A stretch of 61,685 nt of DNA from Vitrella brassicaformis CCMP3155 (lineage: Eukaryota > Protista > Chromerida), in NCBI GenBank assembly GCA_001179505.1, contig CDMY01000509.1, positions 1 to 61,685 on the forward strand, written 5' to 3'. Shown piece after piece: positions 17,309-61,458 of the stretch (position 1 is its first letter; every line of letters starts with the position of its first letter). The notes beneath the pieces are model-generated. The model had not been told where the DNA came from and ran no database searches. It was given only the letters and a program-made list of their open reading frames with translations. The position numbers were made by a program, and so were the translations under genes.

Positions 17309-17879
17309 CGTGACGTCTGAGGTCTCGGCGTGGTTTACGTGAGGTCTGGCAGGCACACACACGGAAAGGCACATGCATTTGGCATTTCAATGGCTCCGCT
17401 TCCTCTCTGGCTGCCATCTTACCCTCCAGTGGGTGAGGTGCAAAGGCCTCAGAATCTTCCCTGATCCGTCTGCGAGCTTGGCTTTCCGCTTTCGGTGCAT
17501 CTTGGCGACAGCGTGGCCGTGTAGAGTGTGTGGGAGATGCCCAAAGAGCTGTCGTGATGTCATCGATCCACACGGATGCCGCCGCCCATCTGTCTGAGTG
17601 ACGCTGATCTGACGCATTGAGGTGAGAGAGGACAAGCAAGAGGGCCTACTGGCATCAGCAATGACAGTCTCCGCGACCTCTGTGTGTTTGTTGCAGATTT
17701 CCGGCACTTTCAGTGGCGTCCAGCAACAGAGCGACAGTCAAAGGCAGCCGAGTAGCCAACTGAGGTACGGCAAGCGGAAGAAAGCCACTCAGAGGCTCAC
17801 AGATTGATGAGGCGACACTCACCGCATTCACTCATATGATGTCCGTGCTGTGACTGTTTGCAGGTGTGCAGATGTGACT

Positions 17880-19184
17880 ATGTCTGCTGCTGCTTCTGAA
17901 GGAGCCGGTGACTCTATAGCTGACGAGCCATCTTCATCTGCTGCGCCGGCTGCTGTCAATGGTAAGCAACCCCATTCAGTGCAAAATGACACAGTCCTGC
18001 CGGCACACAGCTCTCTCTCTCTTTCTCTCTGTGTGAGTGTAGCGGTCAAAGGTGGCGGTCAGCGAGAGAGTGTGCCCTTCTCGGCCGTCGCTGCCACAGT
18101 GACACCGGCTATCGCCCAGTGCCTCAGCGGCAGTGAGTACGCCGGGATGATCGCTCTCAGCCGCATCGATAAGACCCTCCGCAACTCCCTCGCCCCAATT
18201 CTGCTGCCTTTGCTGATGCGCCTGTTGGTCGTCCTGCTGCCCACTATCGGCCTCGATTCTCTCGTCGTGTGGGTCATCCCCCAGCTGCCGCTCCCTGAGG
18301 CACTCAGCCACGGCTGCTGCGTGGCATACCTCATCGAACAGCTCAGCCGGCGGCTGTGGATGATGGAGAGGGGCGGCAAGTGGGCCAGATGGAAACCTGT
18401 GCTGGAGATGCTGTATCTGCTGAGAGGCAAGAGGCCACTGGTGCTGGGGGATGACAACTTCGGCGTCTTCGGCAGCCGGGCGGCCTTCATGAGTGAGAGG
18501 GAGGCGGTCCGCCAGTGGAAGATACTCAGCTGGGGGGTCACTGTCAATCAGGGAGGCCAACAGAGACTCTTGATGGACGGCGATAATATTCTCCTCCACT
18601 GGTATGGCCATCACTGGTATACCTATCAGCCCCCCACTCTCCTCGCCTCTGCCAGCCCCCTCTTCCGTCGTGCCGCATTCGATGCATTCGACCCCACCGA
18701 CCCGCCCACGCAGCTGGCCAGCTACCTGTACTCCAACTACACATCCATGGTGGCCTTCGAGCTGTTCCGCTGGCTGACCAATAGCGGCCACATCCGTCGC
18801 ATCAAATCTTGCTCGTCTTTCCGTCGTGCTTATGCTGAGTACCGGCGTGTGGGTGAGCTGCAGGCGGCCTCTCCCAGCGATGCGGCGCAGTGGGGGGCGG
18901 GGGCGGCCGTATTCAACGAAATGATGGAGGGTTGGAGGGGATGGCATTGCCGGCTGGTGGTGCTGGGCAGTGAGGCGATGGGCGAGGGGCACATGGCAGT
19001 CATTCGGCTGGTGAGAGATTCGGGCCGTACGAGTGACCGCTCTGTGGAGATCTTCACGACCGAGTCGGCCCCCCACGACCACACGCGCACCGTTGTAATG
19101 AGAGTGCTGGGGGACCACCTGGGGGGCAACGTGTGGGATGAGCAGCACGAGACAGACAGAGAGATCATTTTCGTTGTAGAGTAG
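17880..19184 (+). CDS. Lineage-specific family protein with degenerate N-terminal F-box-like motif (exons 17880-17961, 18043-19184)
   Basis: GT-AG intron 17962-18042. Long open exon 2. Paralog of 60307-61424 with 54/57 identical residues in the ERGG.WARWKPVLEMLYLLRG..QWKIL.WG core. Confidence 0.8.
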   Translation: MSAAASEGAGDSIADEPSSSAAPAAVNGKQPHSVQNDTVLPAHSSLSLSLCVSVAVKGGGQRESVPFSAVAATVTPAIAQCLSGSEYAGMIALSRIDKTLRNSLAPILLPLLMRLLVVLLPTIGLDSLVVWVIPQLPLPEALSHGCCVAYLIEQLSRRLWMMERGGKWARWKPVLEMLYLLRGKRPLVLGDDNFGVFGSRAAFMSEREAVRQWKILSWGVTVNQGGQQRLLMDGDNILLHWYGHHWYTYQPPTLLASASPLFRRAAFDAFDPTDPPTQLASYLYSNYTSMVAFELFRWLTNSGHIRRIKSCSSFRRAYAEYRRVGELQAASPSDAAQWGAGAAVFNEMMEGWRGWHCRLVVLGSEAMGEGHMAVIRLVRDSGRTSDRSVEIFTTESAPHDHTRTVVMRVLGDHLGGNVWDEQHETDREIIFVVE

Positions 19185-19599
19185 GACGCACCAGGCAGAC
19201 TCACAGACAGTCTGCTGCCGTGGTGCTCTTGCGGTGTGAGTGTTCCCTTGACAGTGTGACAAGGCTGTGTGTACTAGTGGGAAGCAAAGGCTGTGTTGGA
19301 GTTTTTCCGTTGACCTCTTTGCCATGTTTGGTGCATGCTGTAGCATTCCGGTCCTGGTGTGTGTGCGTGTCCGTCGTGACTGAGTGAAACGAGCGCACTT
19401 TTGCTCATCCATGAGCCGAAAACATTCAGACTGCCGTGAGCATTATCGTTTGTGTGTGTGTGTGTGTGTGTCGAAGCACGCCACCACTGCATTGAGCAAT
19501 AATCAGCCACCATCCCCCCCCCCGCCTCCCCCCTTGTTGCTGCGATGGCATGTGTGTGTCACATCCACCCCCTCAATCAGTTGTCCACCTCCCAACGCC

Positions 19600-23569: not shown

Positions 23570-23873
23570 GCGAGGCCTTTCTTAACACCGATCCCCTCCC
23601 CTCCCGCCATCTCATCTCCTGACCTTCGCAGTAGTCCATCACAATGCACAGCTGGTCGTTCTCAATGAAGCTCTCTCTATACGTCACGACATAAGGGTGC
23701 CGCAGCGAGCTCATCACCTTGACCTCATTCACGGCGTCCTTCTTTTGCTTGGCCTCCATCCGCGATATGTCGATGGTCTTGACGATCAGGGAGCGGCCAT
23801 CCCTGTCAGTCACCAGCACGGCTGACCCGAAGGAGCCCTTGCCCACCACACGAACACGCTTGTATTTGTGCAT
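19958..23873 (-). CDS. NEK: NIMA-related (NEK1/3/5-like) Ser/Thr kinase with long coiled-coil/low-complexity C-terminus
   Basis: [92 protein letters not shown]-terminal [14 protein letters not shown] and [18 protein letters not shown]. Confidence 0.92.
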
Positions 23874-23994
23874 CTTCAAGTTTGAAGTTGAATTTCTGGG
23901 GGCGAGATGGGGGCCTCCGCGTCTCGGTGAGACAGTGACGGCGTCGAACGATTCCTGATTCGGTGGGAGGTTTGTGAGGGCTGCTGAATTGCAG
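23874..23994. promoter_or_regulatory. Putative bidirectional promoter between NEK and EML start codons (121 bp)
   Basis: Divergent ATGs at 23873 (-) and 23995 (+). Function is inferred from geometry only. Confidence 0.5.
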
Positions 23995-24619
23995 ATGTAT
24001 CCGCTCCGCGAAATCCCTGCTGCGGGCCAGGCCCTGGCTGGCGCGGAGAAGGACGATGGCAGCATTCGTGTGCAGGTACGCTTCCCATCCACACATATGC
24101 AGATATCTGCAGACATAAGCGCCGCCCTTTCTGTGTGTCAGCTGGGCCGCAGAATCACGCTGCTGCACCCGCCGACCCAGTGGCAGCCCGACCCCGAGGG
24201 CGCCAAAGCGCCAAACACCCTTCTCGAGCTGCAGTGGGCCTACGGCTACAACGGCTCCCTGCTCAAGTCGCTCCACTGGATCAACTCCCACGAGTATGTC
24301 TACGCCACGGCGGCACTGTGCGTGGTGCAGAATATCCCTCTCAACGTGCAGCGGTTTTTTTCTGGGCATGATGAGGATGTCACTTGTGTGACGTACAATG
24401 TGGCTAGGGGGCTGTGTGCGTCGGGGCAGAGAGACCCCAAGGGACCGGGGGGGCCTTATGTGTGCGTGTGGAGCCCGGGTGAGGATCTGATTGACGTGGC
24501 GATTGCGGAGCTGCATTTTCACCAGAGAGAGGTGACAGCCGTGTGCTTCTCTGCTGATGGCAAGTGAGCTGCGTCGGACTTGGAGCACTGAGAGAGAGTG
24601 CACCCCTCTATGCGATCGA

Positions 24620-24672
<53 letters not shown>

Positions 24673-26905
24673 TCGCTTCTCCCAAGGTATATATACTCCT
24701 TCGGCCGAGACGACCATCACCTCCTCGCCGTCTGGAGGACCCCCTCCCTCGCCGAGCGGCCCATCCCGAAATACGGCGGCCCCAGTCAGCCGTTGAAGCC
24801 CTTGCGCGTGACCACGCCCATCTACTCGGTCGGCACGGGCAAGGCCCCCACCTTTGGGGCGATGACGGCTTTTCGCGCTGGGGGTACCGCAATGGGCACC
24901 ATTGACACGGAGAAGAGGCCTGAGGGGGAGTTTGTGGGGTTTTCCAAGGTGAGAGCAGGCTCTTTGCTCACCTGCAATGGAAAGAAAACCGCTTTGTGTG
25001 TTCTTTGTGTGTGGGGGGGTGGGGGGTGGGGGGCGTGTGTATGCTTGGGTGGTCAGGAGTTTGTGCGGTTTTGGGTGCATCGCGCGGAGGGCCAGGGGCT
25101 GGGGGTGGGCCGGCACATACTCACCAACAACCTGGCTGTATACGGCAAGTGAGCAGATACATCGACCCCTCTCTCTGTGTGTGTCGCTGTGTCTGTCATC
25201 CATCCATCCATCCATTCATCAGGCACCCCACCCCCCGTCGTATGGTCGATGTGGCGTCCGTGTCCTTGTCCACCGAGCGCAAGAGCTGGCTCACAGCCGA
25301 GAACGGATACCTCTACAGCTTCATCGGCAACACCTGCAAACTCGCCGTCAACATCGCCAAAAGGACACACGGCAAGACGCCGCCACTCGGGTGAGTGAAA
25401 GCTTTTGGACCTCTTTCTCTGTCATCTATCTGTGTGTGTATGGTGTATGGTTGTGGGTGTGGGCATTCTTGTGTGTGTGCATTGGGTGTGCAGGGGTGTG
25501 TGTGAGCTGCCGTTGGGCGGCTTCCTGGCTGTAAGTAAGACAGAGACAGAGAGAGAGAGGGAATACTGGCATTGTCTCATTGCCTCCGTGTGTCTGTGCC
25601 TTTGGTAGGCTGACTTTGCGGGTGTGTTATACAGCCGCTCGTGTCTCGCCTCACCCTTGGCTGTGTTCACTCCTGACCAATGGGCGGGAGACGCCGCAAG
25701 GCAACAAACCTCCTCCCCCCCACCAGCCACCGACCACCACCCACACCCACATCTCTCTCTCTGTCTGTGTGTGTGCAGGTGGTTCCAGAAACCCCCGGTC
25801 CTCCGCATAGCGAGCCTGGCCTCCAACCACCGCTTCGACGCCCAGCTCACGCAGAAGATGAAGGCCGGGGAGAGGGAGAGGGAGAGGGAGAGCATCAGCC
25901 TTCTCGTCAGTCAGCCCCATCACACCCCACCCCACCCCTCTAGAATGGAAGTCTCTGCAAATAGGCATTTGTGTGTTGGGTGTAGGTAGCGGCCGGCACG
26001 ACGACGAATCACCTGTTTGTACTGTCGCTGACGCTGGAGAGGGATTACAGGGGGGAGCGGGTGGTTGTGCCGATGGCTTCTACCACTAGCACCATAAGAG
26101 AGGACGTCAAGCGGCTCGCTTCGGCGACTTGGAAGCCTGTAAGAGAACCCTACAAACACATAGGAGAAAAAAGCCATTTGTGGAGCTTTTCCTTTACGGA
26201 CTCTCTCTCTGTCTCTCTCTCTGTGTGTGTGTGTGTGTGTGTATCTGTGGTTCCACGTAGTCTCTGTTGTATGCCTTTCAAGCGGGCCACATGGGCGAGG
26301 TATGGGGGCTGGCGCACCACCCGTCGCTGCAGCTCGCCGTTACCGGCGGAGGCACCACCGTCCGGTTTGTCATCCAGCGACCAACACCTTCTGTCTCTGG
26401 GACGATTTGTCTCCCTCCTTCTATGTGTTTCTTGACACGCAATCGTCAGGTTTTGGGATGTAGCCAAGGGCCGGCCGCTGTTCGGCCAAGTGCTGCGTGT
26501 GGAGCATCCTGTTGGTACGCATCCACACACACACACACACAGACAGACAGAGAGAGAGAAAGGGATATATTGTGTGTGCAGGGAGCCTCTCGTTCGCGCC
26601 AAGTGGTCACTTTTTGGCTGCTGGTCTGGACGGGGGCATGCTGCGCGTGTGGGCCTTTCCGAAACTGGAGCCCGTTTATAACAACTTTGTCGATAGCAGG
26701 CAAGACACAGCCCCTTCGTGTGGGTATCTCGCTATGTGTGTGTGTCTCCTTGGCTCAGGTACAGGGAGCGCGTGTACTTCGTCCAGTGGTCCGACAAGGG
26801 CGACTACCTCGCGGCATGCTGCGGGGACCAGCGCATCTACCTCTTCACGGCGAAGGCAGACAGCTCCACCTACTTCAAGGCAAGCACCCCCCCCCCCCCT
26901 CCACA

Positions 26906-43515: not shown

Positions 43516-44717
43516 TCATTCCTCTGCACCCCAGCTCGTCGTCTTGGTCAGCTCGTCGTTGCTCCGAATCGACTGACGCGGGTCATAGTGGGCGTTCTCA
43601 TCACCGCCGCCGCCCCCTCCCCCTCTCCACTTGCCAGAGCGCACAGGCATTGACACGGAGGGCACCTTGAACCGCACAGCCTTGTTGCCGTGCCGGCGCA
43701 CTTGCAAGGGCGGCGAGTCCTGGTGCAGGTCTGCTCTCGGCTGGTGCGTCTCGTTGTTCTCCTGGCCGGTTTCAAGTGCACTGGCTGGGTGGAAAGCGGG
43801 CGGCGGTGGGGGGACGGAAATGTCAGAGAAGGTGGTCGTGTTGTCGTTGTCTGCGGTGGAGCTCGCGGCGCATGAGTCGTCGTTGCGCATGCCGCTTTGC
43901 CCGAAGGCGTCGTGGTCGTGGTCGTGTTGCGAGGGGACTTTGCAGTAGGCGCACAGGAGGAATTTGCGGAGGGAGCGGCCGCAGACGCAGCACCACAGCA
44001 GAGACATCGCAAACACCAACGCGCCACCGCCCAATGCTGGCACACACACACACACAGAGGTTGAGAGGGAGAGGGTCGGTTCTACAAGGTCACTGGTGCA
44101 CGAGCTGACCTCCATAGAGAAGGAATAGCCATTCCTGCGTGTTGGGGGAGCCGTTGCCGTCGCTTTGGTCCCCTCTCCCTCTGGTCAGGTCGCTCGTGCG
44201 CTGCTGCACGTTGGTCCACTTGTTGTTCTTGTCGGCTGCCTTGTAAGCGGCTGAATGGCCACTAGCAGCCAGTATGGCAGCGCTGGTGGTGTTGGTGGCT
44301 GACCACAGAGCACCGAGAGACAACAGCGTGTCTATGTGTTTATGTGTGTGTGTGGGCTAGGGGGATGGGCCAACTGACCGTTGTGTATGCAGTGGACGGC
44401 CGGCTGGTCCCACAGCAGTGTGCGGTAGTTGGGCAAGAAGCGACAGAACATCGACCCATTCTGCACCGATGGCCTGACACACACCCACACCCCAACACGC
44501 GAAATTGTCTTGCGAGCCATGTCAGCACACAACCATCCGTGTCATGCGTACGTGAGCGGTCTCCATCCGTTCTCCTCGTCACACGCGACCGTCATGGACG
44601 CGCCGCTGATGGCCTGCCCGTCCTCGTTGACGCGCGTGGGCGGCTCGGCTGTCGACACAATGCCGGCAAACGACTCGTTGTTGCCGAGCGGCAGATCAGG
44701 ACACACCGCTTCACAGA

Positions 44718-44767
<50 letters not shown>

Positions 44768-47700
44768 TGGGCGCGCGCAACACACACACGGTGGGTACCG
44801 ACCAGCGGGTTTGGCAAAGACGTCGACGCAGATGGACGGGGAGTCTCCCTGCTGGGCTGTCGATGGATCGGTAACAGCAGTGAGGTTGCGCAAGGCCTCG
44901 CCGAACCAGACTCGTAAGCGATCGCCCTCATGCAGAGAGAGCAGGGTGGGCGAGGGGCCCATGTACGCCTGCACACACACATGCACACACGCATATCTAT
45001 GTGTATGTGGCTGGCTGTGTGAGTCTGCGTGACGCGCTTTGCTGTTTGCGGGTTTACGTCGAAAGTGATGTGCTGATCGTTCCAGTGCTGTCCGCTGACA
45101 GTGTACCAGGCCTCGCCGCACTCACGGCCCACACAGTGAGACGGCACACGAACTGCATGGAAGAGCCACACACACACACACAGACACACACACACACACA
45201 CGCAGTGAGAGAGAGAGATACACAAATGTGTCTCAGATGCGCTTCCACACCCGTACCTGTGTCGCCAGTCCATTTCTGGTCGGGCAGGATGATCGCGTCA
45301 TCGGCATCCGTCAGGAAAAGTCCAGCCTGCACGCACCAAACACACACCGAACACAGACATGCAAACACATGGAGACCCCCGGCCCACCCACACTTACGAT
45401 TAGCTCGTCCGACTGTCCGTCTCCGCCACTGGTGACATTGTTGCTGCAGATGCCGCCCCATCTGCTCCTTGTGCCGTCCCCGAGGCACGCCACATCGCCA
45501 CTCACATGGGACAATTTGACCGCATACACGTCTATCACGTCCTGGGAAACCGTGAAACGAGCTGCCACAAAACCAAACAGAGAGAGAACACACACACACA
45601 CGCAGAGAGAGAGATGCATGGCTCAGTCGCTCACGCGCACACGGACTTACCAGGCTCGTGTGTGTGTGTGGGCACACACACTGGCCCCTGGTTGTTGAGC
45701 TGAAGCCACGGCTGGCAGGCCGAAGTCACGCCGTCACACGACTCGGTGGAGGGGCAGTCACTCTCAACCACACAACCTTCCCACAACACACACACGGGGA
45801 GGGAGAGAGAGATGGCCAATGCCATGGATAGATCTCTCTGTTGTGTGCCGGGAGGGGAGGGAGAGGGTGGCCACGTACCAACACACATGTGTTTGGAGGG
45901 GTGGCACTTGTCGGTCGGCCACGCGCATCCCTCATCGCTGTAGCACTTGGGCGTCGCGTCAATCGCCTGCACCTGTGCCTGCGGCTGCCAACCTGCACAT
46001 CGTGTTGTGGTGTGTGTTGTGTGTTGTGTTTTGTGTGTTGTGTGTTGTGTGCTGCAATGCGACTTGCGTATTTACGTGTGCATCTGAGCGAGATGTCTTC
46101 CCAGATCGGCTTCCGGTAGCTGCTGCCAAACACGCAGGCCACCCTCTCTGTCGGCCGATTCCGACTAAGACAACAAGCATCCCACAATCTACCTGTGTGT
46201 GTGTGCTTCTTGCGTGTGGTGTGTGGTGGCTGAAATACTACTGCCCACTTGAGCGGTCGCCATCCGTCCTCTCCATTACACGCGACCACCACATACTCGC
46301 CCGTGTGAAATGTCACATTGGACAGATCACCGCCGCTCGAAGACAACACCTGCACACACACATACACACACACACAGAGAGAGAGAGAGAGAGGCATACA
46401 CACACACACACACACACGGAGCGAGAGAGAGTCTGTGTGTGTTCGGGGAGATGGCTGTTGCCCACTGTTTCAGCGTCCTGTGTCATTGGTGCACTGATGG
46501 GGACAATCCCGCGGAACGGAAACCGACGCAGATACGTGGCAGGGAACGGTGGACACACCGCCTTCGGCCGCGCGTAGACGTTCACACACGTCTGGCCCTC
46601 ATAGCTATGCGTCGTTCCCGTCGTCGCTGCTGCTGCTGCTGCTGTTGACGTGAAAGTGGACGTGTTGGCGAGCGCCTCGCCGAGCCAGAGGTGCATCCGG
46701 CTGTCGGCGGTGATGTTCATCGGACGGGCCGACATCTGCAGGCAGGCAAGCATTCACACACACGTCCTGTCGTATGTGGTGAGGAGACAGAGGGAGGGGA
46801 GAGGGGGGCCAAGCGAGCGTAGCGTACGGTGAAGACGAGCTGGTCGTCGTTGATGTGCGCGTCTCTCATGAGGTACCAGGCCGACCCGCACGCGCGACCC
46901 ACACACTCGGGAGGCGTCGCAACTGACACACACACATCCATCCACAAATCATTCCTCTCTCTCTCTCTCTCCCCGAGTGAGTGGGCCGGTGAAGTAAATG
47001 TACCTGCGCCCATTCCCTGATGTTTCCGATTGGGCAGCAGCAGCTTGGCTTGCTCGTCCGTCACAAACACGCCCAGACGGTCGTCGTGACCTGATTGATG
47101 CACACACACGCACACACACACAGAGAGAGAGGGAGAGAGAGAGAGAGACATGGGCGTGGGTGCGTGGCGTGGCATGGCATGAGTACCTACCGTTGAAGTC
47201 GGGACATCCCCATCTGCCGGCGCGCTGCGACGCATCCTCCACATCTGTCAGGTCCGTGTCGCTCTCGCTCTCACCAATAGGAACGCACCGAATGCCCCCT
47301 GTCTCCACACACATGGTTAAGGGGCCATGGAGGGAGGGAGGGGAGGTGTGGGTGGGTCTACCTACCGTGGGCGTATTTGACTTTGACGGCATAGGCGTCT
47401 TTGACCGGCTGTGCGACGGCGAACGAGGTCTGGCTGCTGGTGCCGTTGGGCATCTGCAGACACACCTCGCCGTGGGCATTCAGCTGCACCCATGCTGCAC
47501 ACAATGACGACACACACACACACACACACTCAGCCACACTGTCTGTCCCGTCTGTGTGTGTGGCTGGGAAACCCTGGCATGTGTCTGTGAGGGCGTCGCA
47601 GATTTCGCCCTCGAGGCAGCCGAGTCCACTCGATGACACACACTCTGCACACACCAAACACAGATACACAGGCAGAGAGAGAGAAGCCAACTTCCTCACC

Positions 47701-48237
47701 GACACAGGTGCCCTTGTCAGGGTGGCAGGAAGGTGTGGGCCAGCGGCACTGATCGTCGTGCGAGCATGACGACTCGGCTAGGGACTCTGAACAGGCAATC
47801 AATACACGTGTGTGAGTGTGCTCAAAGAGAAAGAGAGTGAGGCTCCTTACTGGCGCATCGAATGTGGATGTCGTCCCACTTGACGGTGCGGTAGTCGGCC
47901 CGGAAGCGGCACAAAAGGTCCTCCTGCCCACCGTAACTGCACACACAAACAAACACCCACACACACAGATGCAATCACTGAGGGTCTGCATGGATCGCAA
48001 GAGGCTCCCTCTACCGACCCTGGTTTAGCCTGGTATCCCCTCTGTGTGTCGCACGCCACCGACACGGTGTCCCCCGCCATGAAGGAGCGGTCAGAGGAGC
48101 TGACGCACACACGGGGAGAGGGAGAGAGAGGGGCAGAGGTGTGTGTGTGTGTGGCTGTAGCGTACGTGTAATTGATGGCAACGACGCCCTCGAGAGTGCC
48201 GTTGTCGAGCGTGGAGAAGGGGAACGCCGGACACGCA

Positions 48238-48274
<37 letters not shown>

Positions 48275-50312
48275 GGGTGCAGACGTGTGTGTCTGCGTGT
48301 CTACACGCAGGCTCATACCAGCGGGCCTTGCGAGGACGTTCATGCAGAGCGTCCCGAGGTTGTCGCGGTGGTTCCACTGGTGCAGCGCCTCACCTGACCC
48401 CGCACACACACAGATGTGTCTACGTGCGTGTGTGGTGTGATCAGGGATACCGAGCCACACGCGCCACTTGGTGCTGCGGTCGATGGCGAGGGTTGATGGG
48501 CCGCTGTGGGTCTGAACGAACGCAGCCACTTTGTCTGTGTGGCTGTGTGAGTCTGTGTCACGGGCTGTGCTGTTTGTGTGCGGGCTGACGTCGAATGTGA
48601 TGTGCTGATCGTTCCAGTGCTGTCCGCTGACAGTGTACCAGGCCTCGCCGCACTCACGGCCCACACAGTGAGACGGCACACGAACTGCATCGAAGAGCCA
48701 TACACACACACAGACACACACACACACGCAGTGAGAGAGAGAGAGAGAGAGAGGGAGAGATCCCCGCGGCCAAGTGTGTGGACTGGTGTGTGGGTGTGGC
48801 CACGTACTTGTGTCTCCAGTGTAGGTGTTGTTGGGCACCACGAGGGTGTTGTTCTCGTCTGCCAGGGTGATGAAGATCCCAAGCTGCTCGCTCTCATCCC
48901 GATTGCCCAATGGCGGGCAGCCCCTGCACACACACACACACACACAAAGGGACAGACAGACGCAGAGAGAGAGAGAGAGATGGCTTTGTGGGTGTCTGTG
49001 TGTGTCCGTGTGGGGCGTGCGCACCATCTGCCGGCACTTGAGGGGTTATGGTGGCAGAATATGACCCCTGCACACACCCAACACACACACACACACACAT
49101 GTGACCACACACACACGCAGACGAACGAACGAACGAACGAAGACATTTCGGCGTGCGTACCGTTGACATACTCCAATCTGACGGCATACACGTTGTCCAC
49201 CCTCCGGGCCACCTGGAACGTCGACCGCTCGTGCGACCCGTCTCTGCTTGACAAGCACACCGGCCCGTTGCCGTTCAGACGCACCCACACTGCACACACC
49301 ACACACACCGCAACACCCACAGAGACGGACAGAGAGGGAGGTGCACACAGTGTGTGCAGAGAGAGAGAGAGAGGGAAGGAGCGGGACCTTGGCAGGTGTT
49401 GGTGACGGCGTCGCAGGTCTCGCCCTCCCTGCAGCCTTCGTTGCCGCGGAGCTGCGGATTGCACCCGATGGCCGGCTTGTCAGATCTGCACACACAATAC
49501 ACACGACACACACACACACATGGATTGTGCGTGCGTCAGAAAGGAACGAGGGAGGGAGGGAAAGTGGGACTACACACATGGATGAGGGCGCGTATGCGTC
49601 TGGTGTGGGCCGGCCGCTCTCGAGCTCGTCCAGGGGCACCTTGGTTTCTGTGACATCCACACACACGGATGGATGGATGGATGGATGAATGGATGTGTGC
49701 CCACTCACTCTCGCATCTGATGTGCACTGTGTCCCATTTGGGCGTCTGCCAGTCGTCGGAGAAGCCGCAACGCACCTTCTGCGTCACATAATCAGGACTG
49801 ACACACACACACACAAGGAGAGAGAGAATGGCTGGCTGTGTGTGAGAGGGAGGGGCTGGCTGTGGTTTGGCTGATGGCTCACTCGGAGGGCGTGTAGCGG
49901 TATTGGAAGCCGTATGCCTCTGAAGTGCCCTCGCTGCAGCCCAGCAGCCGGTAGCTGCCCGTCATATCCACCACACCCTTGTGGCCTGGACCACTGGATG
50001 ACACACAAAGACAATAACACAATAACACGCACGATGACACACACCCCTTACCCTCGGCCCTTGGTGCTGACGCCCCGCATGGTCCCCTGGTTGAGCCGCC
50101 AGGAGGGGAAGGGGAGGCACTCCACAGACTCCATCACATAGACGTCCGCACACGTGTCCGCAGCGGTCGCCCGCCGTGCGGCTGATCGCTGGGTCATGTT
50201 GTGGAGCCGCTCGCCGAGGGTGAGGGTGAGCCTGTCTCCCTCGGTCAGGTGCAGCAGCTGGCTGCCGTAGGACGTCTGCAACAATGGGGCACACACAAGA
50301 GGGCGTTCTGTG

Positions 50313-50345
<33 letters not shown>

Positions 50346-50905
50346 CTTTGGGGGTGGAATTCTTCACTTGAATGATGAACTGGTTGCCGTCGATGGAGGC
50401 GTTGCGGCCGGTCATGGTGTACCAGGCCTCGCCACACGGCTGGCCCAGACAGGCGCGCGGCACAGACACTGTCGAGAGAGAACCGCCAGACAATGAGTGA
50501 GTGGGCGTGGTGCCACCACACACGAGTGTGGTTGTGTGGACGCACCCACCTGTTTCGCCCGAGTACATTGAAGCGGGCAGCATGACGTCCGACGCAGAGG
50601 CAGAGGCCCCATCAGACTCGCCGGCTTCGTCTGCACGACAGACACATGACACAAGGGCCTGCAGTGCTGTGGTGTGTGTGTGAGTGTGTGTGTGTGGGCC
50701 GACGCACCACTGTCGTCACTGTCGTCTGTGTCTCTGTCAACTTTTTCCTTGGTGATGAAGACGCCGAGCATCTCCTGGCCACCCTCCTCCTCCGTCGACA
50801 TGCACCCCCACTTGTGAGCATCGGCACTGCTGTCGTTCCCACCTCCGCTGTCGTTCCCACCTCCCCCACCCCCACACGCAATGGCGCCTACACACACACA
50901 TCCAT

Positions 50906-50943
<38 letters not shown>

Positions 50944-51359
50944 GCTGTCACCGGAAGTGTGTTTGAGCAGGACGGCGTAGACGTCGCGTATAGTGTCTTT
51001 CATCTCGAATGCGTCACCGATGCACACCGGGCCGTCGCGGTTGACCTTCTGCCAACCTGTGTGTGTGCAGGCGTGTGTGACGGACAGACGCACAATCATT
51101 CGCTTCGCTCGCTCACCGCTCGTCAGCCCATGGATGTCGACGCACGTCTCGCCTGTGTACTCTGCGCACACACCAAGGATCCATCCATCCATCCATTCAC
51201 ACGTGTGTCCGTTCGGACGGACCTTGGTCAGTGCCGTTGCTGCCGTTGTTGCCCCTGAGCGCCTCGCCAAACCACAGCCGGCCGGTCGACCCGCCGCGCA
51301 ATGACAGAGGCGACAGACCATTGGCCGTCTGCGGACACACACATACACCGCTGGAGCTG

Positions 51360-51392
<33 letters not shown>

Positions 51393-52426
51393 CCTGGAAG
51401 ACGATCTGTGTGGCGTTGAAGGTGTTATTCTTGACCAGGTACCACGCCTGGGCGCACGTCTGGCCCAGACAGTAATCCGGCACTGACACTGCACACACAC
51501 ACACACACACACATGAATGGTCCGGACACACACACACACCCATTGTGTGACAAACACACCTGTGCTGCCCATGTATCTGGCGGCCGGGAGCAGCACCCTG
51601 TCGAAGCGGTCGGTCAGAAAGAGACCCAGCGCCCTGTCGCTGCCTTCGTCACTCTCGCCCTCACCATCCACTCGCCCTCCCCCGCCCCTCGGACACCCGA
51701 AGCGGCCAACCACAGTCGTGTTGCCGCAGCTGATGCCCCCTACACACACACAAACGGAGAGAGAGAGAGAGGAGAATGAAAGTGTCTGTGTGNNNNNNNN
51801 NNNNNNNNNNNNNNNNNNNNNNNNNNNNNNNNNNNNNNNNNNNNNNNNNNNNNNNNNNNNNNNNNNNNNNNNNNNNNNNNNNNNNNNNNNNNNNNNNNNN
51901 NNNNNNNNNNNNNNNNNNNNNNNNNNNNNNNNNNNNNNNNNNNNNNNNNNNNNNNNNNNNNNNNNNNNNNNNNNNNNNNNNNNNNNNNNNNNNNNNNNNN
52001 NNNNNNNNNNNNNNNNNNNNNNNNNNNNNNNNNNNNNNNNNNNNNNNNNNNNNNNNNNNNNNNNNNNNNNNNNNNNNNNNNNNNNNNNNNNNGTGGGGGG
52101 GGGGGGGGGGGGGGGTTGGCTGACCGCTGTGGTAGGTGAATCGTAGCGCCTGCACTCGTCTGAGGTCGCGGGGTATGCTGAACTGGCCCCTGTCTGACAG
52201 CTCAGCGGCGCCCATACACACCGGGCCGTCACCGTTGAGCTGCACCCACTCTGCACATAAACATACATGGATCACCGATAGGCGTGAGTGTGTGAGTGTG
52301 TGTGCGTGTGGCTGGTCACTCACCTGCTTCCCCCAGGAATGCCGCTGCGCCATTGGCAAGCAGCATTATCAGGACGGCAGCAAGAGCACATGCGTGGCAA
52401 AAGCTGTTGTAGCTGTTGTAGCTCAT
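43516..52426 (-). CDS. Large type-I membrane surface protein: signal peptide, five ~150-aa repeated domains, four sushi-like and several small Cys-knot modules, TM helix, cytoplasmic tail
   Basis: Start MSYNSYNSFCHACALAAVLIMLLANGAAA (52426). Repeats begin WVQLNGDGPVC, WQKVNRDGPVC, WVRLNGNGPVC, WVQLNAHGEVC, WLQLNNQGPVC. TM segment WLFLLYGALGGGALVFAMSLLWCCVC. Ends ..TTSWGAEE* at 43516. Confidence 0.85.
51793..52092. other. Assembly gap (300 N) inside an intron of the surface-protein gene
   Basis: Run of N. The flanking exons (..TYHSG | GISC..) join without an obvious missing piece. Confidence 1.
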
Positions 52427-55992: not shown

Positions 55993-56130
55993 TCACCAGT
56001 TGAAGTATATAAGATCCTAGGCGAGTCAAGCGGGTAGCATCCGTTCGTTCTCTCAAGATCTGTCCCTTTGTTATCTATCTGTCCGCGCGCGTGTGTGTGT
56101 GGCACAGCGTCGAGTCGCGGTCAGATCGCC
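55993..56130. promoter_or_regulatory. Putative bidirectional promoter between ABHD18-like gene and DEAH helicase (138 bp)
   Basis: Divergent ATGs at 55992 (-) and 56131 (+). Function is inferred from geometry only. Confidence 0.45.
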
Positions 56131-56996
56131 ATGGACGAGGATCTGTCGATAGATCACAACGAGCAGGTCAGTCACCACACCACACCCACGAACACCACCA
56201 CATCAGCGCATGCACCATCCCATCTGCCCGTTCCATGGACACTGCAGCATGACGACGAGGATGCAGACGGCGTCGCGCCACGGCGGCTCAACCACCACCA
56301 CACCAACGTGAAGCCACCCGACCTGAGTGCCCCAACGCCCGAATCAGACGCAGCAGCCCGGAGGGAGAAGCTGCGCGTCCAGCGTGAGGGCCTCCCGGTG
56401 TGTTCCTACCGTGATCAGATTGTGGGCATGCTGACGTCTTCGCCCGTGGTGATAGTGGTGGGCGAGACGGGCAGCGGCAAGTCGACACAGATCTGCCAGT
56501 ACCTCCAGGACAGTGAGGACTTCAGGACGGCATGCTTCGGGGCGCAACACAAGGTGCGCATTGCACCGCACGTGGGATGGACGGCTGGTGGATCGATGGG
56601 TGCATCCGATGCGTCCGATGGATGCGTCTGTGTGTGTGTGGTGTGTGTGTCAGGATTCCATCCGCATCGCCATCACGCAGCCGCGTCGTGTTGCTGCCGT
56701 CGCCACCGCCAAGCGAGTCGCCGACGAGCGGGGCGGCAAAATCGGTACGCACACCACGGAAGGAAGATGCGCACGTGGATGGGATGTGCGGCTGGTTGGC
56801 TGGCGGCTGCAGGGGGGGAGGTGGCATATTCGATTCGCTTTGACGACACGGCGTCCCCTCGGACCCGCATAAGGTTTCTCACGGACGGGTGTCTGTTGCG
56901 GGAGTGCCTTCACGACCGGCATATCCTCAACTACCAGGTGAGTCCATGCCAGCCATCCATCCATCCATCCATCCTAACACACAAACATCTCTCTCC

Positions 56997-57031
<35 letters not shown>

Positions 57032-59903
57032 TGTGCAGGTGATCATCCTGGATGAGGCGCACGAGCGGTCTGTGAGCACCGACGTGTTGTTCGGCATCAT
57101 CAAGGGCGCCCTGGCCGTCAGGGCAGGCAACCTACGAGTGCTAGTCACCAGGTCGGCACATACACATGACACAAACCAACACGGGACCTTCAAGCAAGTG
57201 TGTGTGTGTGGTCAGTGCGACGCTGAACACGGAGCTGTTCAGCAAGTACTTCGGGAACGCTCCCGTGCTCAACATCCCCGGCAGATGCTACCCCGTCGAC
57301 ATCCACTACTCACCTCTCACAAAAGGAACGCCGCACCACCACCACCACCACCACCAAAGATACACACAACACAGACCAGCACAATGTGTGCGTGTGTTGT
57401 GCGCAGGGGGCACTGCCCGCGTTGAGGCGTGTGTCAACGCCGCTTTGCGTCTGCACATGGAGGAGAACGACCACCCCTGCGCACACATTCTGATCTTCGT
57501 GACGGGGATGGAGGAGTGTGAGCGGGGCTGCACCATGGCATACGACAAGCTACAGGCCCTCATGGAAAGCGGTCAGCCCCCCACCGCCGCCCCGAACACC
57601 CACCACCCACACCACAAACTCGGCTGCAATCCAATCTCTGTGTGTGTGTGCAGGGAGGGAGGTGGGCGACGTGTTGATAGTGCCGCTGTACGGCGCCCTT
57701 GCGTCGGAGGACCAGCATCTCGTCTTTGAGGAGGTCCCGCTGGTGAGTAACTCACTCACCAGTGTGTCTGCTCGTGGATGGATGGCTGGATGTCTGCGTG
57801 TGTTGCGTCAGGACTGCCGCAAGATCGTCTTCGCCACCAACATCGCCGAAACCTCGCTGACTGTGGTAGGTTTGGCAGCGGACCGCACGAAGGCAGCGAC
57901 CGTCTTGTACTCATGTGTGTGTGTTGGTCAAATGTGTCAGGACAACGTCGGGTTCGTCATCGACTCGGGATACGTCAAACAGGCAAGCAAGCACATGAAT
58001 CCAGTGCCAATGCGAGCGGCTTATTGCGCTGCCTCGCTGCATTCTCCCTCCCTCCCTCCCTCCCTCCCTCACCTGACAGAAATCCTACAACGCCAAGACA
58101 GGTCGGCTTAAGGCAGGCAGAGAGATGCGAGTGGGCTCACAAACGACGCAGTGGCATGTTGTGTGTGCGTGTGTGTGTTGGTGGGCAGGGATGGATTTGA
58201 TCCAGACGATGCAGGTGTCCAAGGTGCAGGCCGAGCAGCGCACGGGCAGGGCGGGCAGGACCAAAGCCGGTAAGTAAGCACGGCCAACCAAGCCAACCAA
58301 CACACGACGCACACTTCCCTCTGCTCTCCTCCGCCCAACACACACGCGCAGGCAAGTGCTTCCGCCTCTACAGCATCGACAACTGGAAGCAGTAGCCACC
58401 TCCCCCCACCCACCCACCCACACAGACAGACAGACAGCGACACAGACTCCTCATTGTGTGGTCATCAGTTTCCAGGCGGTGACGACGCCCGAGATCCAGC
58501 GGGTCAACCTGTCGGCGGTGGTGCTGCAGCTAAAATGCATGGGCATCAACGACGTCCTGCACTTCGACTTCCTGGAGCCGCCGTCGACCACCGCCCTGCT
58601 GCTGGCCTACAGGCTGCTGTACTTGCTCAAGGCCATCGACGCGGAGGGGGCGGTGACCACTGAGGGGCAGTTTATGGTCGAGGTGCCTCTGGAGCCGACG
58701 TATGCACGGTGAGTGTGGGTGGATGGATGGATGGATGTGTGTCGCCGAGGGTCGATCGTGTTGTTGGTCTGGCTAGGTGTGTGTTGGCGTCTACGTGGCT
58801 GGACGTGACGGACGAGATGCTCACGCTGGTGGCCATCCTCTCGTCAGAAAACGTGTGGGTGAGACCCTCCAAGCAGAACGAGGCCGCCGTCAACAAGGCC
58901 TCAAGGGCACACAAACAGTGAGTGCTCACCCACCCAAACCGCACACAGAGGAAAGAGAGACAAACAGACCGGCCGCATGTGTTTGTCCGTCTGTAATAAC
59001 TGCACACAGGTTCCATCACGCCACAGGCGACCACCTCTCCCTGCTGACGGTATTCTCCGAGTGGCTCGACAACCGCACCGACCGCCGCCCCGACTGGTGC
59101 AAGTCCCACTTCATCAGCCACCGCTCCCTGCGCATGGCCATGGACATCCGGCGGCAGCTTAGAGAGCAGCTCGACAAGATCCACATTCCACGCAAACCGG
59201 CCGATGATGCCGACAGCCGGCTGGTTGAGGTGCGTCGAGTGCCGACAAGCGAGCGGGTGCGTCGGGCGCTGTGTGCGGGACTGTTCATGCACACGGCGAG
59301 GCGGTCTGAGACGGTGGATGCCTGGGTGAGTGTGGGCGAATCGACGCTGGCAAGGCCCGAGAGGGACAGCGCGCTGGAGGATATGGACCCGCCCCCACAG
59401 TGGCTCATTTACAGCGAGTGAGCAACTGCGTGACTGAATGGATGGATGGATGGATGGGCGGACACACACAACGCACCTCTGTGTGTATGTGTATGTGTGT
59501 GTCTGTCTTTGTGTGGATCAGGTTGTCGGGTCAGAGTGCTGGTGCGGCCATCTTGCGGTGCGTGTCGGTCATCGACAGGGAGTGGGTGGACGAGCTCCTC
59601 AAGCGAATGGACCACGTCGACCTCAAAAAACTTGCAAACTACCACCCAGCCGACAGCACGGCCGATGGGCGAGGCAGGGGCAGGTAGGTACACGCACCTC
59701 AGCACTCAGCACGTGCCTTTGTGCCTAGTCTGTTATTGCATGTGTGTGTGGTGTGGTGTGTTGTGTTGTGTGGGGTGTGCAGGAAACGTGTGCTTGAGAA
59801 GGACCCAGCAGCGCCTGAGGCGGCTGTGTCGACTGAGGAGCAGGGGCAGCGTGTGATGAGTGCTAAGGAGAGATACCTCGCCAGGAAGAAACAGGGCAGC
59901 TGA
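56131..59903 (+). CDS. DEAH-box RNA helicase (DHX40/PRP22-like)
   Basis: GETGSGKSTQ, TQPRRVAA, DEAH (57051-57062), SAT, ILIFVTG, ATNIAETSLT, QRTGRAGRT, followed by HA2 and OB-like regions. Ends RYLARKKQGS*. Exact ortholog not resolved. Confidence 0.92.
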
Positions 59904-60306: not shown

Positions 60307-61424
60307 CTATCCACCCCGCCGTAACAGCCTGGCGCCCAGCTGATCCCCAAGCACTCTCATTACAGCGGTGTGCGTGCAGTGGCGCGGGGCCGACTCGGTT
60401 GTATAGATACTAACAGAGCAATCCCACCAATCCCGCCCACGATGCATCTCGATGACTGCCATGTGCCCCTCGCCCATCGCCTCACTCCCAAACACCACCA
60501 GCCGATAATGCCGTCCGTCCTCCCGCTTTTCGTCGAATACGGCCGCCCCCGCCCCCCACTGTGCCGCATCGCTGGGAGAGACCGCCAGCAGCCGACCCAC
60601 ACGCCTACGCCGAGACGCGGCAGACGCAAGAGCACGCCTCTGCCGCCACCCTGGTGACGGGGGAAAGAAGCGGAGGTGCATGGCGTACCAGGATTCGATG
60701 CAATCGATGTGGTTGCTGCGCGCAAGCCAACGGAACACGACGAAGGCCACCATGGTTATGCAGTTGGGGCACGTCCCGTCCAGCTCTGTGGGCGAGTCCG
60801 CGGCATCGAATGCATCATGACGGAAGAGCGGGCTGGCAGAGGTGAGGAGCGCGGAGAGCTGATAGCAAAACGAGTAGGAAAGGATTTTATCGCCGTCCAT
60901 CAGGGCCCTTTGTTGGCCTCTCTGAGTGACAGTGATCCCCCAGATGAGTATCTTCCACTGGCGGACCGCCTCCCTCTCACTCATGAAGGCCGCCCGGCTG
61001 CCGAAGACGCCGAAGGTGTCATCCCCCAGCACCAGCGGCCTCTTGCCTCTCAGCAAATACAGCATCTCCAGCACTGGTTTCCATCTGGCCCAGCTGCCGC
61101 CCCTCTCGAGCATGAACAGCCGGCGGCTGAGCTCTTCTATGAGGGCCCTGGTCAGGGCCACCGTGACGGCCACCCCCTGAGTGAGCTGTGGGATGGGCAC
61201 CTCCACCAACACACCGAGGCCGAGTGACGCCATAACAATAGGGAGCAGACGCTGCAGAATAGGCAGCAGGACGGTGGGCATGAGGGCGCCATGGCGGCTC
61301 TTGTCGATGCGGCGGAAGGCACACAAGTCGGCATAGCTGCTGAGGCATGCAGCGATGGCCGGCGTCACCTCAGCAGGGAGGTCAGCGAACGGAACGCCCT
61401 CTCGCTGACCGCCACCTTTGACCG
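60307..61424 (-). pseudogene. F-box-like lineage-specific paralog of 17880-19184, with mutated splice acceptor
   Basis: Open exon VKGGGQREGVPFADLPAEVTPAIAACLSSYADLCAFRRIDK..RRGG*. The acceptor reads GTGTAA|CGGTC where the paralog has GTGTAG|CGGTC. No first exon is visible in the window. Confidence 0.6.

Positions 61425-61458
<34 letters not shown>

What the first reader, a model, noticed from the sequence alone, without database searches (positions are those of the whole stretch)
43516..52426. Surface protein built from five copies of a domain resembling an unnamed anthozoan (coral/anemone) extracellular domain
Seen in sequence: five repeats (~52250-51117, 51056-50135, 49289-48319, 47494-46563, 45708-44803) share the pattern W-x-x-(L/V)-N-x-x-G-(P/E)-V-C ... 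(A/V)-x-L-x-(H/Y)-x-(S/N)-G-x-I-x-C ... (W/F)-G-C ... L-G-x-F-x-T-(D)...LLP ... AWY ... (L/V)W(F/L)GE(A)L ... (T/I/L)-C-(V/M/A)-(D/N)-(V/I). Repeats 2-5 are each followed by a sushi-like module (CP.FP...VAC...G..P...C.F...Y...W(D/E)...+.C). From memory, the repeat matches an uncharacterised ~150-aa domain expanded in stony corals and sea anemones (W.KVN..PVCFGA...LVH.SG...C...WGC...IWYGEDL...DN.G.TC.DVYA). Inference: a coral-associated alveolate displays a host-like domain array on its surface, suggesting adhesion, mimicry or horizontal transfer. I know of no description of this architecture.
Basis: partly seen in the sequence, partly recalled or inferred. Interest (0 to 1): 0.85.

Follow-up and report, generated by a model that had tools for sequence, protein, structure and literature searches.

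The report
Alga's five-copy sea-anemone-type lectin protein
A coral-associated alga (Vitrella brassicaformis) encodes a large cell-surface protein built from five copies of a sugar-binding lectin domain (AJLec type) that the literature describes as found only in sea anemones and corals, which makes it a testable candidate for alga-coral recognition.

Summary
On the minus strand, 52426-43516 is one 43-exon gene with an intact 5,208-nt reading frame (1,735 aa). The assembly gap lies inside intron 2 and removes no coding sequence.

The domain is not uncharacterised. It belongs to the AJLec lectin family, founded by the Ca2+-dependent galactose lectin of the sea anemone Anthopleura japonica (PDB 6A56). 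A profile built only from non-Vitrella members scores the gene at 196 bits. A coral member models onto 6A56 with TM 0.90. Pfam has no model for the family.

The origin is unresolved. The five Vitrella domains form one clade, but AU tests (p 0.29 and 0.51) do not place it inside Cnidaria. A divergent GC-rich environmental group, of unknown and probably non-cnidarian origin, also carries the domain. Only domain 3 keeps the canonical Ca2+/sugar ligands.

The parts
43516..52426 (-). Whole gene: 43 exons, 5,208-nt CDS, 1,735 aa, type I membrane protein
   Evidence: Manual splice model. It has no internal stop, 41 GT-AG introns plus 1 GC-AG intron, and introns of 55-123 nt. Exon and phase table.
52324..52426 (-). 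Exon 1: start codon and signal peptide (hydrophobic core about aa 9-31)
   Evidence: Highest Kyte-Doolittle windows fall at aa 9-15. Sequence view.
51740..52124 (-). Intron 2, which contains the assembly gap (N run 51793-52092) and a poly-C run
   Evidence: Donor and acceptor read. The domain alignment is continuous across the junction.
51117..52250 (-). AJLec-type domain D1 (aa 35-218, exons 2-6)
   Evidence: Family HMM 43 bits. Includes the single GC-AG intron at 51329-51393.
50126..51056 (-). AJLec-type domain D2 (aa 219-424), with an acidic/Gly-rich insertion
   Evidence: Matches the HMM in two halves.
49710..50125 (-). Sushi/CCP-like module S2
   Evidence: Pattern of four Cys and one Trp.
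49388..49647 (-). Spacer L2: one degenerate module and one intact small Cys-rich module
48319..49289 (-). AJLec-type domain D3 (aa 572-744), the only copy that keeps the E141/D150/N151 equivalents
   Evidence: Family HMM 58 bits, E 1e-10 at library scale. Site alignment.
47851..48238 (-). Sushi/CCP-like module S3
   Evidence: The near-identical module in paralog P0001 gives Sushi clusters by features (score 0.95) and TM 0.56-0.67.
47573..47786 (-). Spacer L3: two four-Cys modules
   Evidence: Only weak EB/DPY-like leads.
46562..47494 (-). AJLec-type domain D4 (aa 878-1075)
46077..46561 (-). Sushi/CCP-like module S4 (the donor at 46466 has an alternative at about 46416)
45712..45992 (-). Spacer L4: two four-Cys modules
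   Evidence: Pfam Dumpy_DPY at E 0.012 only.
44803..45711 (-). AJLec-type domain D5 (aa 1231-1415)
   Evidence: Family HMM 46 bits.
44379..44708 (-). Sushi/CCP-like module S5
44132..44298 (-). Juxtamembrane stalk (Ser/Thr/Asn-rich)
43981..44131 (-). Transmembrane helix (aa about 1556-1581), split by the last intron
   Evidence: Second hydrophobic maximum at aa 1557-1564.
43516..43980 (-). Cytoplasmic tail (154 aa) ending ..TSWGAEE, plus the stop codon

Best explanation
The locus is one native, intron-rich Vitrella brassicaformis gene. It encodes a 1,735-aa type I membrane glycoprotein with this layout: signal peptide, D1, D2, sushi-like module, spacer, D3, sushi-like module, spacer, D4, sushi-like module, spacer, D5, sushi-like module, stalk, TM helix, 154-aa cytoplasmic tail.

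Shown: D1-D5 are members of the AJLec lectin family. This is a small jelly-roll beta-sandwich first defined by the Ca2+-dependent galactose-specific lectin of the sea anemone Anthopleura japonica. All five keep the four Cys of the two family disulfides and the Glu of the WYGEDL motif, and they add a lineage-specific Cys pair (CxGxxCG.AWY). The five copies arose by tandem duplication within the Vitrella lineage after introns had been acquired, because two intron positions and phases are shared by all five.

Inferred: the protein is displayed on the cell surface as an extended glycan-recognition or adhesion receptor. D3, which retains the Glu/Asp/Asn Ca2+ ligands, is the best candidate for canonical Ca2+-dependent sugar binding. 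The other four have altered sites, so they either bind something else or act as spacers. Whether the domain came from a cnidarian host or is an old, patchily kept eukaryotic domain is not resolved.
For: Gene model: 43 exons read through 5,208 nt with no stop, using consensus GT-AG sites. Intron positions and phases are conserved among repeats.

Family membership: phmmer of paralog fragment P0001:1-100 against 1.84e9 representative proteins finds P0002 at E 4e-12. P0002 in turn links to coral proteins. An HMM built from non-Vitrella domains scores the spliced protein at 196 bits, E 2e-53 at Z=1.84e9, with full-length domain matches. The reciprocal Vitrella-only HMM hits Nematostella, Actinia and Exaiptasia at 57-62 bits over its full length.

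Fold: the AF2 model of Acropora palmata P0024:103-248 has pLDDT 89.8. Foldseek matches it to 6a56_A AJLec at TM 0.90, E 3e-14. The family profile hits the AJLec sequence at E 7e-41.

Site residues: the AJLec ligands are listed in PMC6070535.

Topology: signal peptide, TM helix, 24 N-glycosylation sequons and 66 ectodomain Cys.

Native gene: window GC is 58% against 37-38% for the coral loci. The gene has 4-5 introns per domain, whereas Acropora encodes the whole domain in one exon.
Against: The splice model is manual; it contains one GC-AG intron and at least one ambiguous donor.

Vitrella's own domain could not be folded or scanned remotely, because a spliced sequence has no reference. The fold is therefore inferred through about 25-30% identical homologues.

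D150/N151 equivalents are missing in D1, D2, D4 and D5, and D142 is replaced in all five. Lectin activity is therefore uncertain.

The sushi assignment lacks HMM support, and the AF2 model of that module is poor, with pLDDT 45.

The gene's own product did not appear in the 1.84e9-protein library, so the public annotation probably lacks or breaks it.
Confidence: 0.72

Rival explanations
1. Host-derived domain. Vitrella, or an ancestor living with cnidarians, acquired an AJLec-type lectin exon from a cnidarian by horizontal transfer. It then gained introns, multiplied the domain five-fold and fused it to sushi modules and a membrane anchor. It now uses this host-type lectin array to bind or mimic coral surface molecules.
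For: Every named homologue is a cnidarian: Acropora, Montipora, Pocillopora, Stylophora, Oculina, Nematostella, Actinia, Exaiptasia, Xenia and Hydractinia. AFDB and ESM-Atlas fold neighbours are cnidarian clusters. Papers state the family is exclusive to cnidarians (PMC6070535; PMC10377782). No other alveolate hit appeared among 1.84e9 proteins. The Vitrella-only HMM ranks anthozoans first and the GC-rich environmental group last. A 48-row tree places Vitrella sister to Acropora at 99/89 support. Chromerids associate with corals (PMC4501334).
Against: AU tests do not reject Vitrella lying outside all cnidarian sequences (p 0.29; p 0.51 with delta lnL 0.34). The 106-row tree is unresolved. Vitrella has a long stem branch and only 25-30% identity to cnidarian domains. 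No intron is shared with coral. Probably non-cnidarian members exist, since the environmental contigs have GC 49-61%. Searches for large multi-domain proteins in other protists were limited by the tools' length windows.
Confidence: 0.3
2. Old, patchily retained eukaryotic domain. The AJLec fold predates Cnidaria and survives in several marine protist lineages, with Vitrella and the GC-rich environmental clade as remnants. Its apparent restriction to cnidarians would then be a sampling and annotation artefact, because there is no Pfam model.
For: A divergent clade of two-domain proteins comes from metatranscriptomes and a Tara metagenome scaffold. Their GC is 49-61% and GC3 is 51-74%, unlike cnidarian loci. 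Constrained trees that keep all cnidarian-type sequences together, with Vitrella outside them, are statistically as good as the best tree. Pfam has no model for the family, since only 1 of 35 members gives a weak DUF3821 hit, so annotation pipelines cannot see the domain.
Against: The taxa of the environmental sequences are unknown. No named non-cnidarian was found among 119+33 hits or among AFDB clusters. Vitrella is more similar to anthozoan members than to the GC-rich group.
Confidence: 0.35
3. Lectin fold used only as a scaffold. The five domains have lost sugar binding and serve as rigid spacers or protein-binding modules in a wall, matrix or cyst-associated protein.
For: Four of the five domains lack the D150/N151 equivalents, and all lack D142. 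An extra disulfide and loop insertions lie next to the aromatic platform strand.
Against: D3 and its paralog copy P0001 keep the Glu/Asp/Asn triad and Gly153. E141 and the platform Trp are kept in all five. The AJLec paper notes that sugar-contacting residues vary among homologues while the fold persists.
Confidence: 0.3
4. Artefact: coral DNA contamination, a mis-assembly across the gap, or a dead gene.
For: The locus contains an assembly gap. The gene product is missing from the protein libraries. A truncated chimeric copy exists on another contig.
Against: Window GC is 58% against 37-38% for coral. The short microsatellite-rich introns are the same kind seen throughout the window. The coral gene has no intron in the domain. 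The gap is intronic. A 1,735-codon frame that stays intact over 43 exons is not expected of a pseudogene.
Confidence: 0.04

Closest known systems
AJLec, the galactose-specific Ca2+-dependent lectin of the sea anemone Anthopleura japonica (PDB 6A56; Unno et al. 2018, PMC6070535), and its uncharacterised cnidarian homologues
   Same: It is the same domain family by profile. It has the same two intradomain disulfide positions (C15-C156 and C48-C61 equivalents), the same W.GE motif Glu (E141) and the same aromatic platform position (F103 to W). D3 also keeps D150, N151 and G153.
   Different: AJLec is a soluble 18.5-kDa single-domain, disulfide-linked dimer. The Vitrella protein is a 1,735-aa membrane protein with five tandem domains. 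It has an added Cys pair, longer loops, D142 replaced in all copies, and D150/N151 lost in four copies. It comes from an alveolate alga rather than a cnidarian, and each domain is split by 4-5 introns.
Stony-coral PAN/Apple + AJLec-domain proteins (for example Acropora digitifera LOC107339770, P0018)
   Same: They share a homologous C-terminal domain and are secreted or extracellular.
   Different: The coral proteins are about 245 aa, have one domain after a PAN module, and encode the domain in a single exon. They have no sushi module, TM helix or tail.
LecA/PA-IL of Pseudomonas aeruginosa
   Same: It is a small jelly-roll, Ca2+-dependent galactose lectin with a similar site position (PMC6070535). 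It appears as a weak feature neighbour.
   Different: There is no sequence homology. The AJLec authors consider the fold similarity convergent.
Apicomplexan and chromerid modular surface adhesins (TRAP/MIC2-type, sushi-containing apical proteins; Woo et al. 2015, PMC4501334)
   Same: It shares the type I topology and a mosaic of 'animal-like' adhesive modules with sushi-like units. The tail has a Trp near an acidic C-terminus.
   Different: It has no TSP1 or vWA domains. The tail is 13% acidic and the Trp is fifth from the end, so it does not meet the TRAP-tail definition (PMC2169348).

Membership tests
AJLec-type lectin domain family | Significant full-length similarity to a profile of established members | tested here: met
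   The non-Vitrella HMM scores 196 bits, E 2e-53 at Z=1.84e9. D1, D3 and D5 each cover HMM positions about 3-140. The reciprocal Vitrella HMM hits anthozoan proteins at 57-62 bits.
AJLec-type lectin domain family | Small jelly-roll beta-sandwich fold as in PDB 6A56 | not testable with these tools
   This was shown for a coral member (TM 0.90 to 6a56_A). Vitrella's own domain is split over 5-6 exons and has no reference to hand in, so its fold is inferred from the alignment.
AJLec-type lectin domain family | Two intradomain disulfides (Cys15-Cys156 and Cys48-Cys61) | tested here: met
   All four Cys columns are occupied by Cys in D1-D5. The pairings are taken from PMC6070535.
AJLec-type lectin domain family | Sugar-site Ca2+ ligands Glu141, Asp150 and Asn151, reported as conserved in all cnidarian homologues | tested here: inconclusive
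   The Glu141 equivalent is present in all five. Asp150/Asn151 are present only in D3 (RDNLG). D1 has Glu/Tyr, and D2, D4 and D5 have lost them. The feature is met for one domain and not met for four.
AJLec-type lectin domain family | Ca2+-dependent binding of terminal galactose | not testable with these tools
   This needs recombinant protein and glycan assays.
Sushi/CCP/SCR module | About 60-aa module with four Cys (1-3, 2-4), a conserved Trp, and a Pfam PF00084 match | tested here: inconclusive
   The four-Cys plus Trp pattern is present in S2-S5, but the modules are 80-95 aa. Pfam gives no hit even at E<=10. AF2 pLDDT is 45. Language-model features give 75 of 100 nearest named clusters as Sushi, with score 0.95 and TM 0.56-0.67.
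TRAP-family adhesin cytoplasmic tail | [quoted passage not shown] | tested here: not met
   The tail has 20 of 154 acidic residues (13%), and the Trp is fifth from the end.

The most novel reading that the evidence does not exclude
Vitrella acquired an AJLec-type lectin exon from a cnidarian host. It expanded the exon into a five-domain membrane receptor and uses this host-type lectin array to dock onto galactose-bearing glycans of coral mucus or cells, or to interfere with the host's own lectin-based recognition. This would be an animal-to-alga gene transfer that shapes a coral association.
Probability: 0.2. Interest if true: 0.85.

Novelty: new variant of a known kind. Interest (0 to 1): 0.6.

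Why it matters
Lectin-glycan recognition is a main working model for how corals and anemones recognise their microalgal partners. AJLec-type lectins are described as a cnidarian-only invention. Here the same domain sits, five-fold and membrane-anchored, on a coral-associated relative of the apicomplexan parasites. That yields a concrete protein to test in alga-coral contact, through D3 binding assays, localisation, and binding to coral mucus or larvae. It also corrects the stated taxonomic range of the AJLec family, and it points to further, probably protist, members in ocean metatranscriptomes. Finally, it exposes an annotation blind spot: the family has no Pfam model, and this 43-exon gene seems to be missing from the protein databases. 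The result also feeds the long-standing question of where the 'animal-like' adhesive domains of apicomplexans and their algal relatives came from.

Tried and rejected
- Pfam on single exons found nothing useful.
- Composite MAFFT alignments of exon fragments, meant to build a full-domain profile, were misaligned and were discarded (A1, A2, A5).
- The search for homologous proteins with a stop-free read-through of D3 returned only the paralog fragment P0001.
- In the phmmer result, P0003 is a bacterial Calx-beta-like repeat protein, and I judged it spurious.
- The DUF3821 hit on P0002 is partial and occurs in only 1 of 35 members, so I rejected it.
- A check for the dinoflagellate spliced leader on environmental transcripts L006, L007 and L010 found nothing.
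- The neighbouring ORFs on Tara scaffold L008 look spurious and gave no taxon.
- AF2 of the sushi-like module as a single sequence gave pLDDT 45, which is unusable, so no fold search was run on it.
- A PDB sequence search with that module found nothing relevant.
- A metagenome scan for close relatives of P0001 found none.
- The TRAP-like tail idea was tested against the published definition and was not met.
- The tree-based HGT claim was tested twice with AU tests and was not supported statistically.
- The spliced Vitrella protein was not sent to any remote tool because it has no reference. It was analysed only locally with HMMER, MAFFT and IQ-TREE.

Full report
ORGANISM AND LOCUS. The window is eukaryotic DNA with 58% GC. 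It contains very short exons and short introns full of (GT)n, (CT)n and (CA)n runs. Earlier notes of this scan name the genome as Vitrella brassicaformis. This agrees with my only close protein hit, P0001, an 'unnamed protein product [Vitrella brassicaformis CCMP3155]' on contig CDMY01000500.1.

GENE MODEL. I read the minus strand in three frames and joined exons at consensus splice sites. The result is 43 exons running from ATG 52426 to stop 43516, giving 5,208 nt and 1,735 codons with no internal stop. There are 41 GT-AG introns and one GC-AG intron (51393-51329). Intron lengths are 55-123 nt, apart from the intron that holds the gap. The model is manual. One donor in sushi module 4 has an equally legal alternative.

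The required gap test came out as follows. Exon 2 ends at 52125 and exon 3 starts at 51739. The N run (52092-51793) and a poly-C tract lie between a GT donor and an AG acceptor. The junction (..YHSG|GISC..) is at the same place and phase as the corresponding intron of D2-D4, and D1 aligns to the other copies without a missing segment. The gap is therefore intronic and the frame is continuous.

ARCHITECTURE. The order along the protein is:
- signal peptide (hydrophobic maximum at aa 9-31)
- D1 (aa 35-218), then D2 (219-424)
- a sushi-like module and a spacer
- D3 (572-744), a sushi-like module and two four-Cys modules
- D4 (878-1075), a sushi-like module and two four-Cys modules
- D5 (1231-1415) and a sushi-like module
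- a stalk, a TM helix (about aa 1556-1581) and a 154-aa tail

The ectodomain has 24 N-glycosylation sequons and 66 Cys. The five D copies are 29-48% identical and share six Cys.

Two intron positions and phases are shared by all five copies: phase 1 before V.VP..C, and phase 0 after the ..(V/I)(F/I)(Q/T/D) strand. A third, phase 1 after SG, is shared by D1-D4. The array therefore grew by genomic tandem duplication after these introns existed.

WHAT THE DOMAIN IS. Single exons gave nothing in Pfam. A spliced protein has no reference, so I could not send it to the remote tools. Instead I reached the family through P0001, a 218-aa Vitrella gene model that is a truncated, chimeric paralog fragment at the start of another contig.

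phmmer of P0001:1-100 against 1.84 billion representative proteins found only three hits: itself, P0002 (E 4e-12) and a spurious bacterial repeat protein. P0002 is a three-domain protein from an environmental assembly. LVH.SG...C ... NWGC ... LRLWYGEDL ... DN.G..C.D(V/I)). Searching with P0002 found stony-coral proteins from Acropora (four species), Montipora, Pocillopora and Oculina, most of them a PAN domain followed by this domain.

I then ran local HMMER on my spliced protein. An HMM built only from 59 non-Vitrella domains scores it at 196 bits (E 2e-53 with Z set to 1.84e9). D3, D5 and D1 give E 1e-10, 5e-7 and 5e-6 over essentially the full model. Conversely, an HMM of the five Vitrella domains hits Nematostella, Actinia, Exaiptasia and Montipora proteins at 54-62 bits over its full length. 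Homology is secure.

FOLD AND KNOWN RELATIVE. An AlphaFold2 model of the Acropora palmata domain (alignment A3, 35 sequences) has pLDDT 89.8 and pTM 0.87 and is an all-beta sandwich. [quoted passage not shown] The next hit has TM 0.39. The family profile hits the AJLec sequence at E 7e-41.

AJLec is a Ca2+-dependent lectin specific for beta-linked terminal galactose, with a small jelly-roll fold. It has disulfides Cys15-Cys156 and Cys48-Cys61. Its sugar-site Ca2+ is held by Glu141, Asp150 and Asn151 plus the main-chain oxygens of Met147 and Cys48 (PMC6070535). The family's invariant WYGEDL...E.DN.G..C motif is exactly this site.

Pfam-A has no model for the domain, because 1 of 35 members gives only a weak partial DUF3821 hit.

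STATE OF THE SITE IN VITRELLA. hmmalign to the family model gives these results:
- All four disulfide Cys, the Glu141 equivalent (W.GE) and the aromatic platform residue (Phe103 to Trp in AWY) are kept in D1-D5.
- Asp142 is replaced (Ala or Arg) in all five.
- Asp150, Asn151 and Gly153 are kept only in D3 (..RDNLG..C) and in its paralog copy.
- D1 has Glu/Tyr at those positions, and D2, D4 and D5 have lost them.
- A Cys pair (CxGxxC) just before the AWY strand is present in all five Vitrella copies and in no other member I saw.

The commitment I make is that the protein is a surface-displayed glycan-recognition or adhesion receptor in which D3 is the most likely canonical Ca2+/sugar site. The other copies would be diverged binders or spacers. 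The surface display and the binding are inferences.

SUSHI-LIKE MODULES AND SPACERS. S2-S5 share a CP.FP start, four Cys and a Trp before the last Cys, but they are 80-95 aa long. Pfam finds no Sushi match even at E<=10. PDB sequence search gives nothing relevant. A single-sequence AF2 model is unusable, with pLDDT 45. The protein atlas does support the assignment: 75 of the 100 nearest named clusters are Sushi, with score 0.95 and 197-200 shared features, and TM is 0.56-0.67 to sushi proteins. I keep the label 'sushi-like'. The four-Cys spacers give only weak EB/Dumpy-DPY/EGF-like leads.

DISTRIBUTION. A profile search with tandem-domain alignment A4 returned 119 proteins. Every one that carries a name is cnidarian:
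- sea anemones Nematostella, Actinia and Exaiptasia
- stony corals Oculina, Montipora, Stylophora and Pocillopora
- the octocoral Xenia
- the hydrozoan Hydractinia

The 13 strong AFDB-cluster matches (TM 0.76-0.93) are followed by a sharp drop to TM<0.5. One of them is literally named 'Cnidarian restricted protein'. The organism column was blank, so assigning the others to cnidarians rests on accession series I recognise, which is unchecked. ESM-Atlas neighbours by features and by shape are clusters labelled 'commonest Cnidaria'. The AJLec paper and a 2023 review state that homologues occur only in cnidarians. A full-text search found no paper placing AJLec-type domains in chromerids.

The restriction is probably not absolute, however. 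A divergent group of mostly two-domain proteins from metatranscriptomes and a Tara metagenome scaffold (P0035, P0038, P0041-52, P0049, P0147, P0148) sits on contigs with 49-61% GC and GC3 of 51-74%. The coral-type loci have 37-38% GC. The taxa of this group are unknown, and no dinoflagellate spliced leader was seen.

ORIGIN. The five Vitrella domains are always one clade (100/100, 99, 100/99).

In a 48-row tree that clade is sister to the Acropora group inside coral sequences (99/89). The AU test, however, does not reject a tree with all coral-type rows together (p 0.29). With 106 rows the position is unresolved.

In a careful 64-row tree, Vitrella falls on the cnidarian side of the branch that separates the GC-rich environmental group (89/81). 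A tree that holds Vitrella together with the GC-rich group, and so outside all cnidarian-type sequences, is only 0.34 log-likelihood units worse (AU p 0.51).

The Acropora gene encodes the whole domain in one exon, so there is no shared intron to argue from. If a transfer happened, it was old enough for intron gain, five-fold duplication and divergence to 25-30% identity.

Similarity ranking and known distribution favour a cnidarian connection. Phylogeny does not demonstrate it. I give transfer from a cnidarian and old patchy ancestry roughly equal weight.

Contamination is excluded by composition, by intron structure and by the embedding of the gene in typical Vitrella sequence.

COMPARISON AND NOVELTY. 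The domain is a member of a known, structurally defined lectin family. The new points are:
- the host organism, which is to my knowledge and searches the first named non-cnidarian and an alveolate alga
- the five-domain, sushi-interleaved, membrane-anchored architecture
- the extra disulfide
- the partly degenerate sugar sites

I therefore class it as a new variant of a known kind. The tail ends ..TSWGAEE, which recalls TRAP-family adhesin tails. It fails the published definition, which requires 18-30% acidic residues and a Trp at the second or third position from the end. Here the tail is 13% acidic and the Trp is fifth from the end.

LIMITS. There are no expression data. The splice model is manual. 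Vitrella's own domain was neither folded nor scanned remotely. The remote homology searches were bounded by query-length windows. AFDB organism names were not shown. The environmental clade has no assigned taxon.

Noticed in passing
L001:617-1963 (contig CDMY01000500.1, start of contig): A truncated, chimeric paralog fragment is annotated as the 218-aa protein P0001. It joins an L4b/D5-start-like exon directly to D3-like exons c-e, followed by a sushi-like module and part of a spacer. Its exons are about 95% identical to the window gene, and the middle of the lectin domain is missing. It is probably a partial duplicate or pseudogene at a contig edge.
   Followed up: partly
window 43516-52426: The gene's own product did not come back from a phmmer scan of 1.84 billion representative proteins, although P0001 is about 95% identical to part of it. 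The public annotation probably lacks or fragments this 43-exon gene.
   Followed up: partly
L006, L007, L008/L009, L010 (environmental contigs of P0038, P0043, P0147, P0049): A divergent clade of AJLec-like, mostly two-domain proteins sits on GC-rich contigs (49-61% GC), including a Tara Oceans metagenome scaffold. These are unlike cnidarian loci (37-38% GC). This suggests non-cnidarian members and contradicts the published 'cnidarian-only' range. The taxon is unknown.
   Followed up: partly
L004:3894-4154 (Acropora digitifera DF970828.1): A second, degenerate AJLec-like stretch (48% identical to the real exon) lies inside the single intron of the coral PAN+AJLec gene. It may be a decayed or alternative exon.
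   Followed up: no
window 51329-51393: This is the only non-GT donor in the model, a GC-AG intron of 65 nt after the D1 'IVFQ' exon. No in-frame GT donor gives an intron of workable length there.
   Followed up: partly
window 43519-43540: The cytoplasmic tail ends ..TSWGAEE. A Trp near an acidic C-terminus is reminiscent of apicomplexan TRAP/MIC2 tails, but the tail does not meet their definition.
   Followed up: yes
window 47573-47786, 45712-45992, 49388-49485: Pairs of about 22-28-aa four-Cys modules lie between each sushi-like module and the next lectin domain. There are only weak leads to EB/Dumpy-DPY/EGF-like modules. In spacer L2 the first module has lost its Cys.
   Followed up: partly
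window 17850-19412, 23806-25215, 56068-57042, 60307-61452: The longest stop-free ORFs elsewhere in the window have no Pfam match. In this GC-rich, microsatellite-laden sequence, long ORFs on both strands are probably not genes.
   Followed up: partly
P0012, P0013, P0011 (C-termini); P0014, P0015 (middle): Unnamed AJLec-domain proteins from transcriptome assemblies combine the domain with a Cys-rich C-terminal module (..GEGDCDSD..C.G.LKCG..NC..) or with a jelly-roll-like middle domain. Others combine it with TSP1, Kunitz, Gal_Lectin plus Kazal, FN2, F5/8-C or fn3. The domain is a widely shuffled extracellular module.
   Followed up: no
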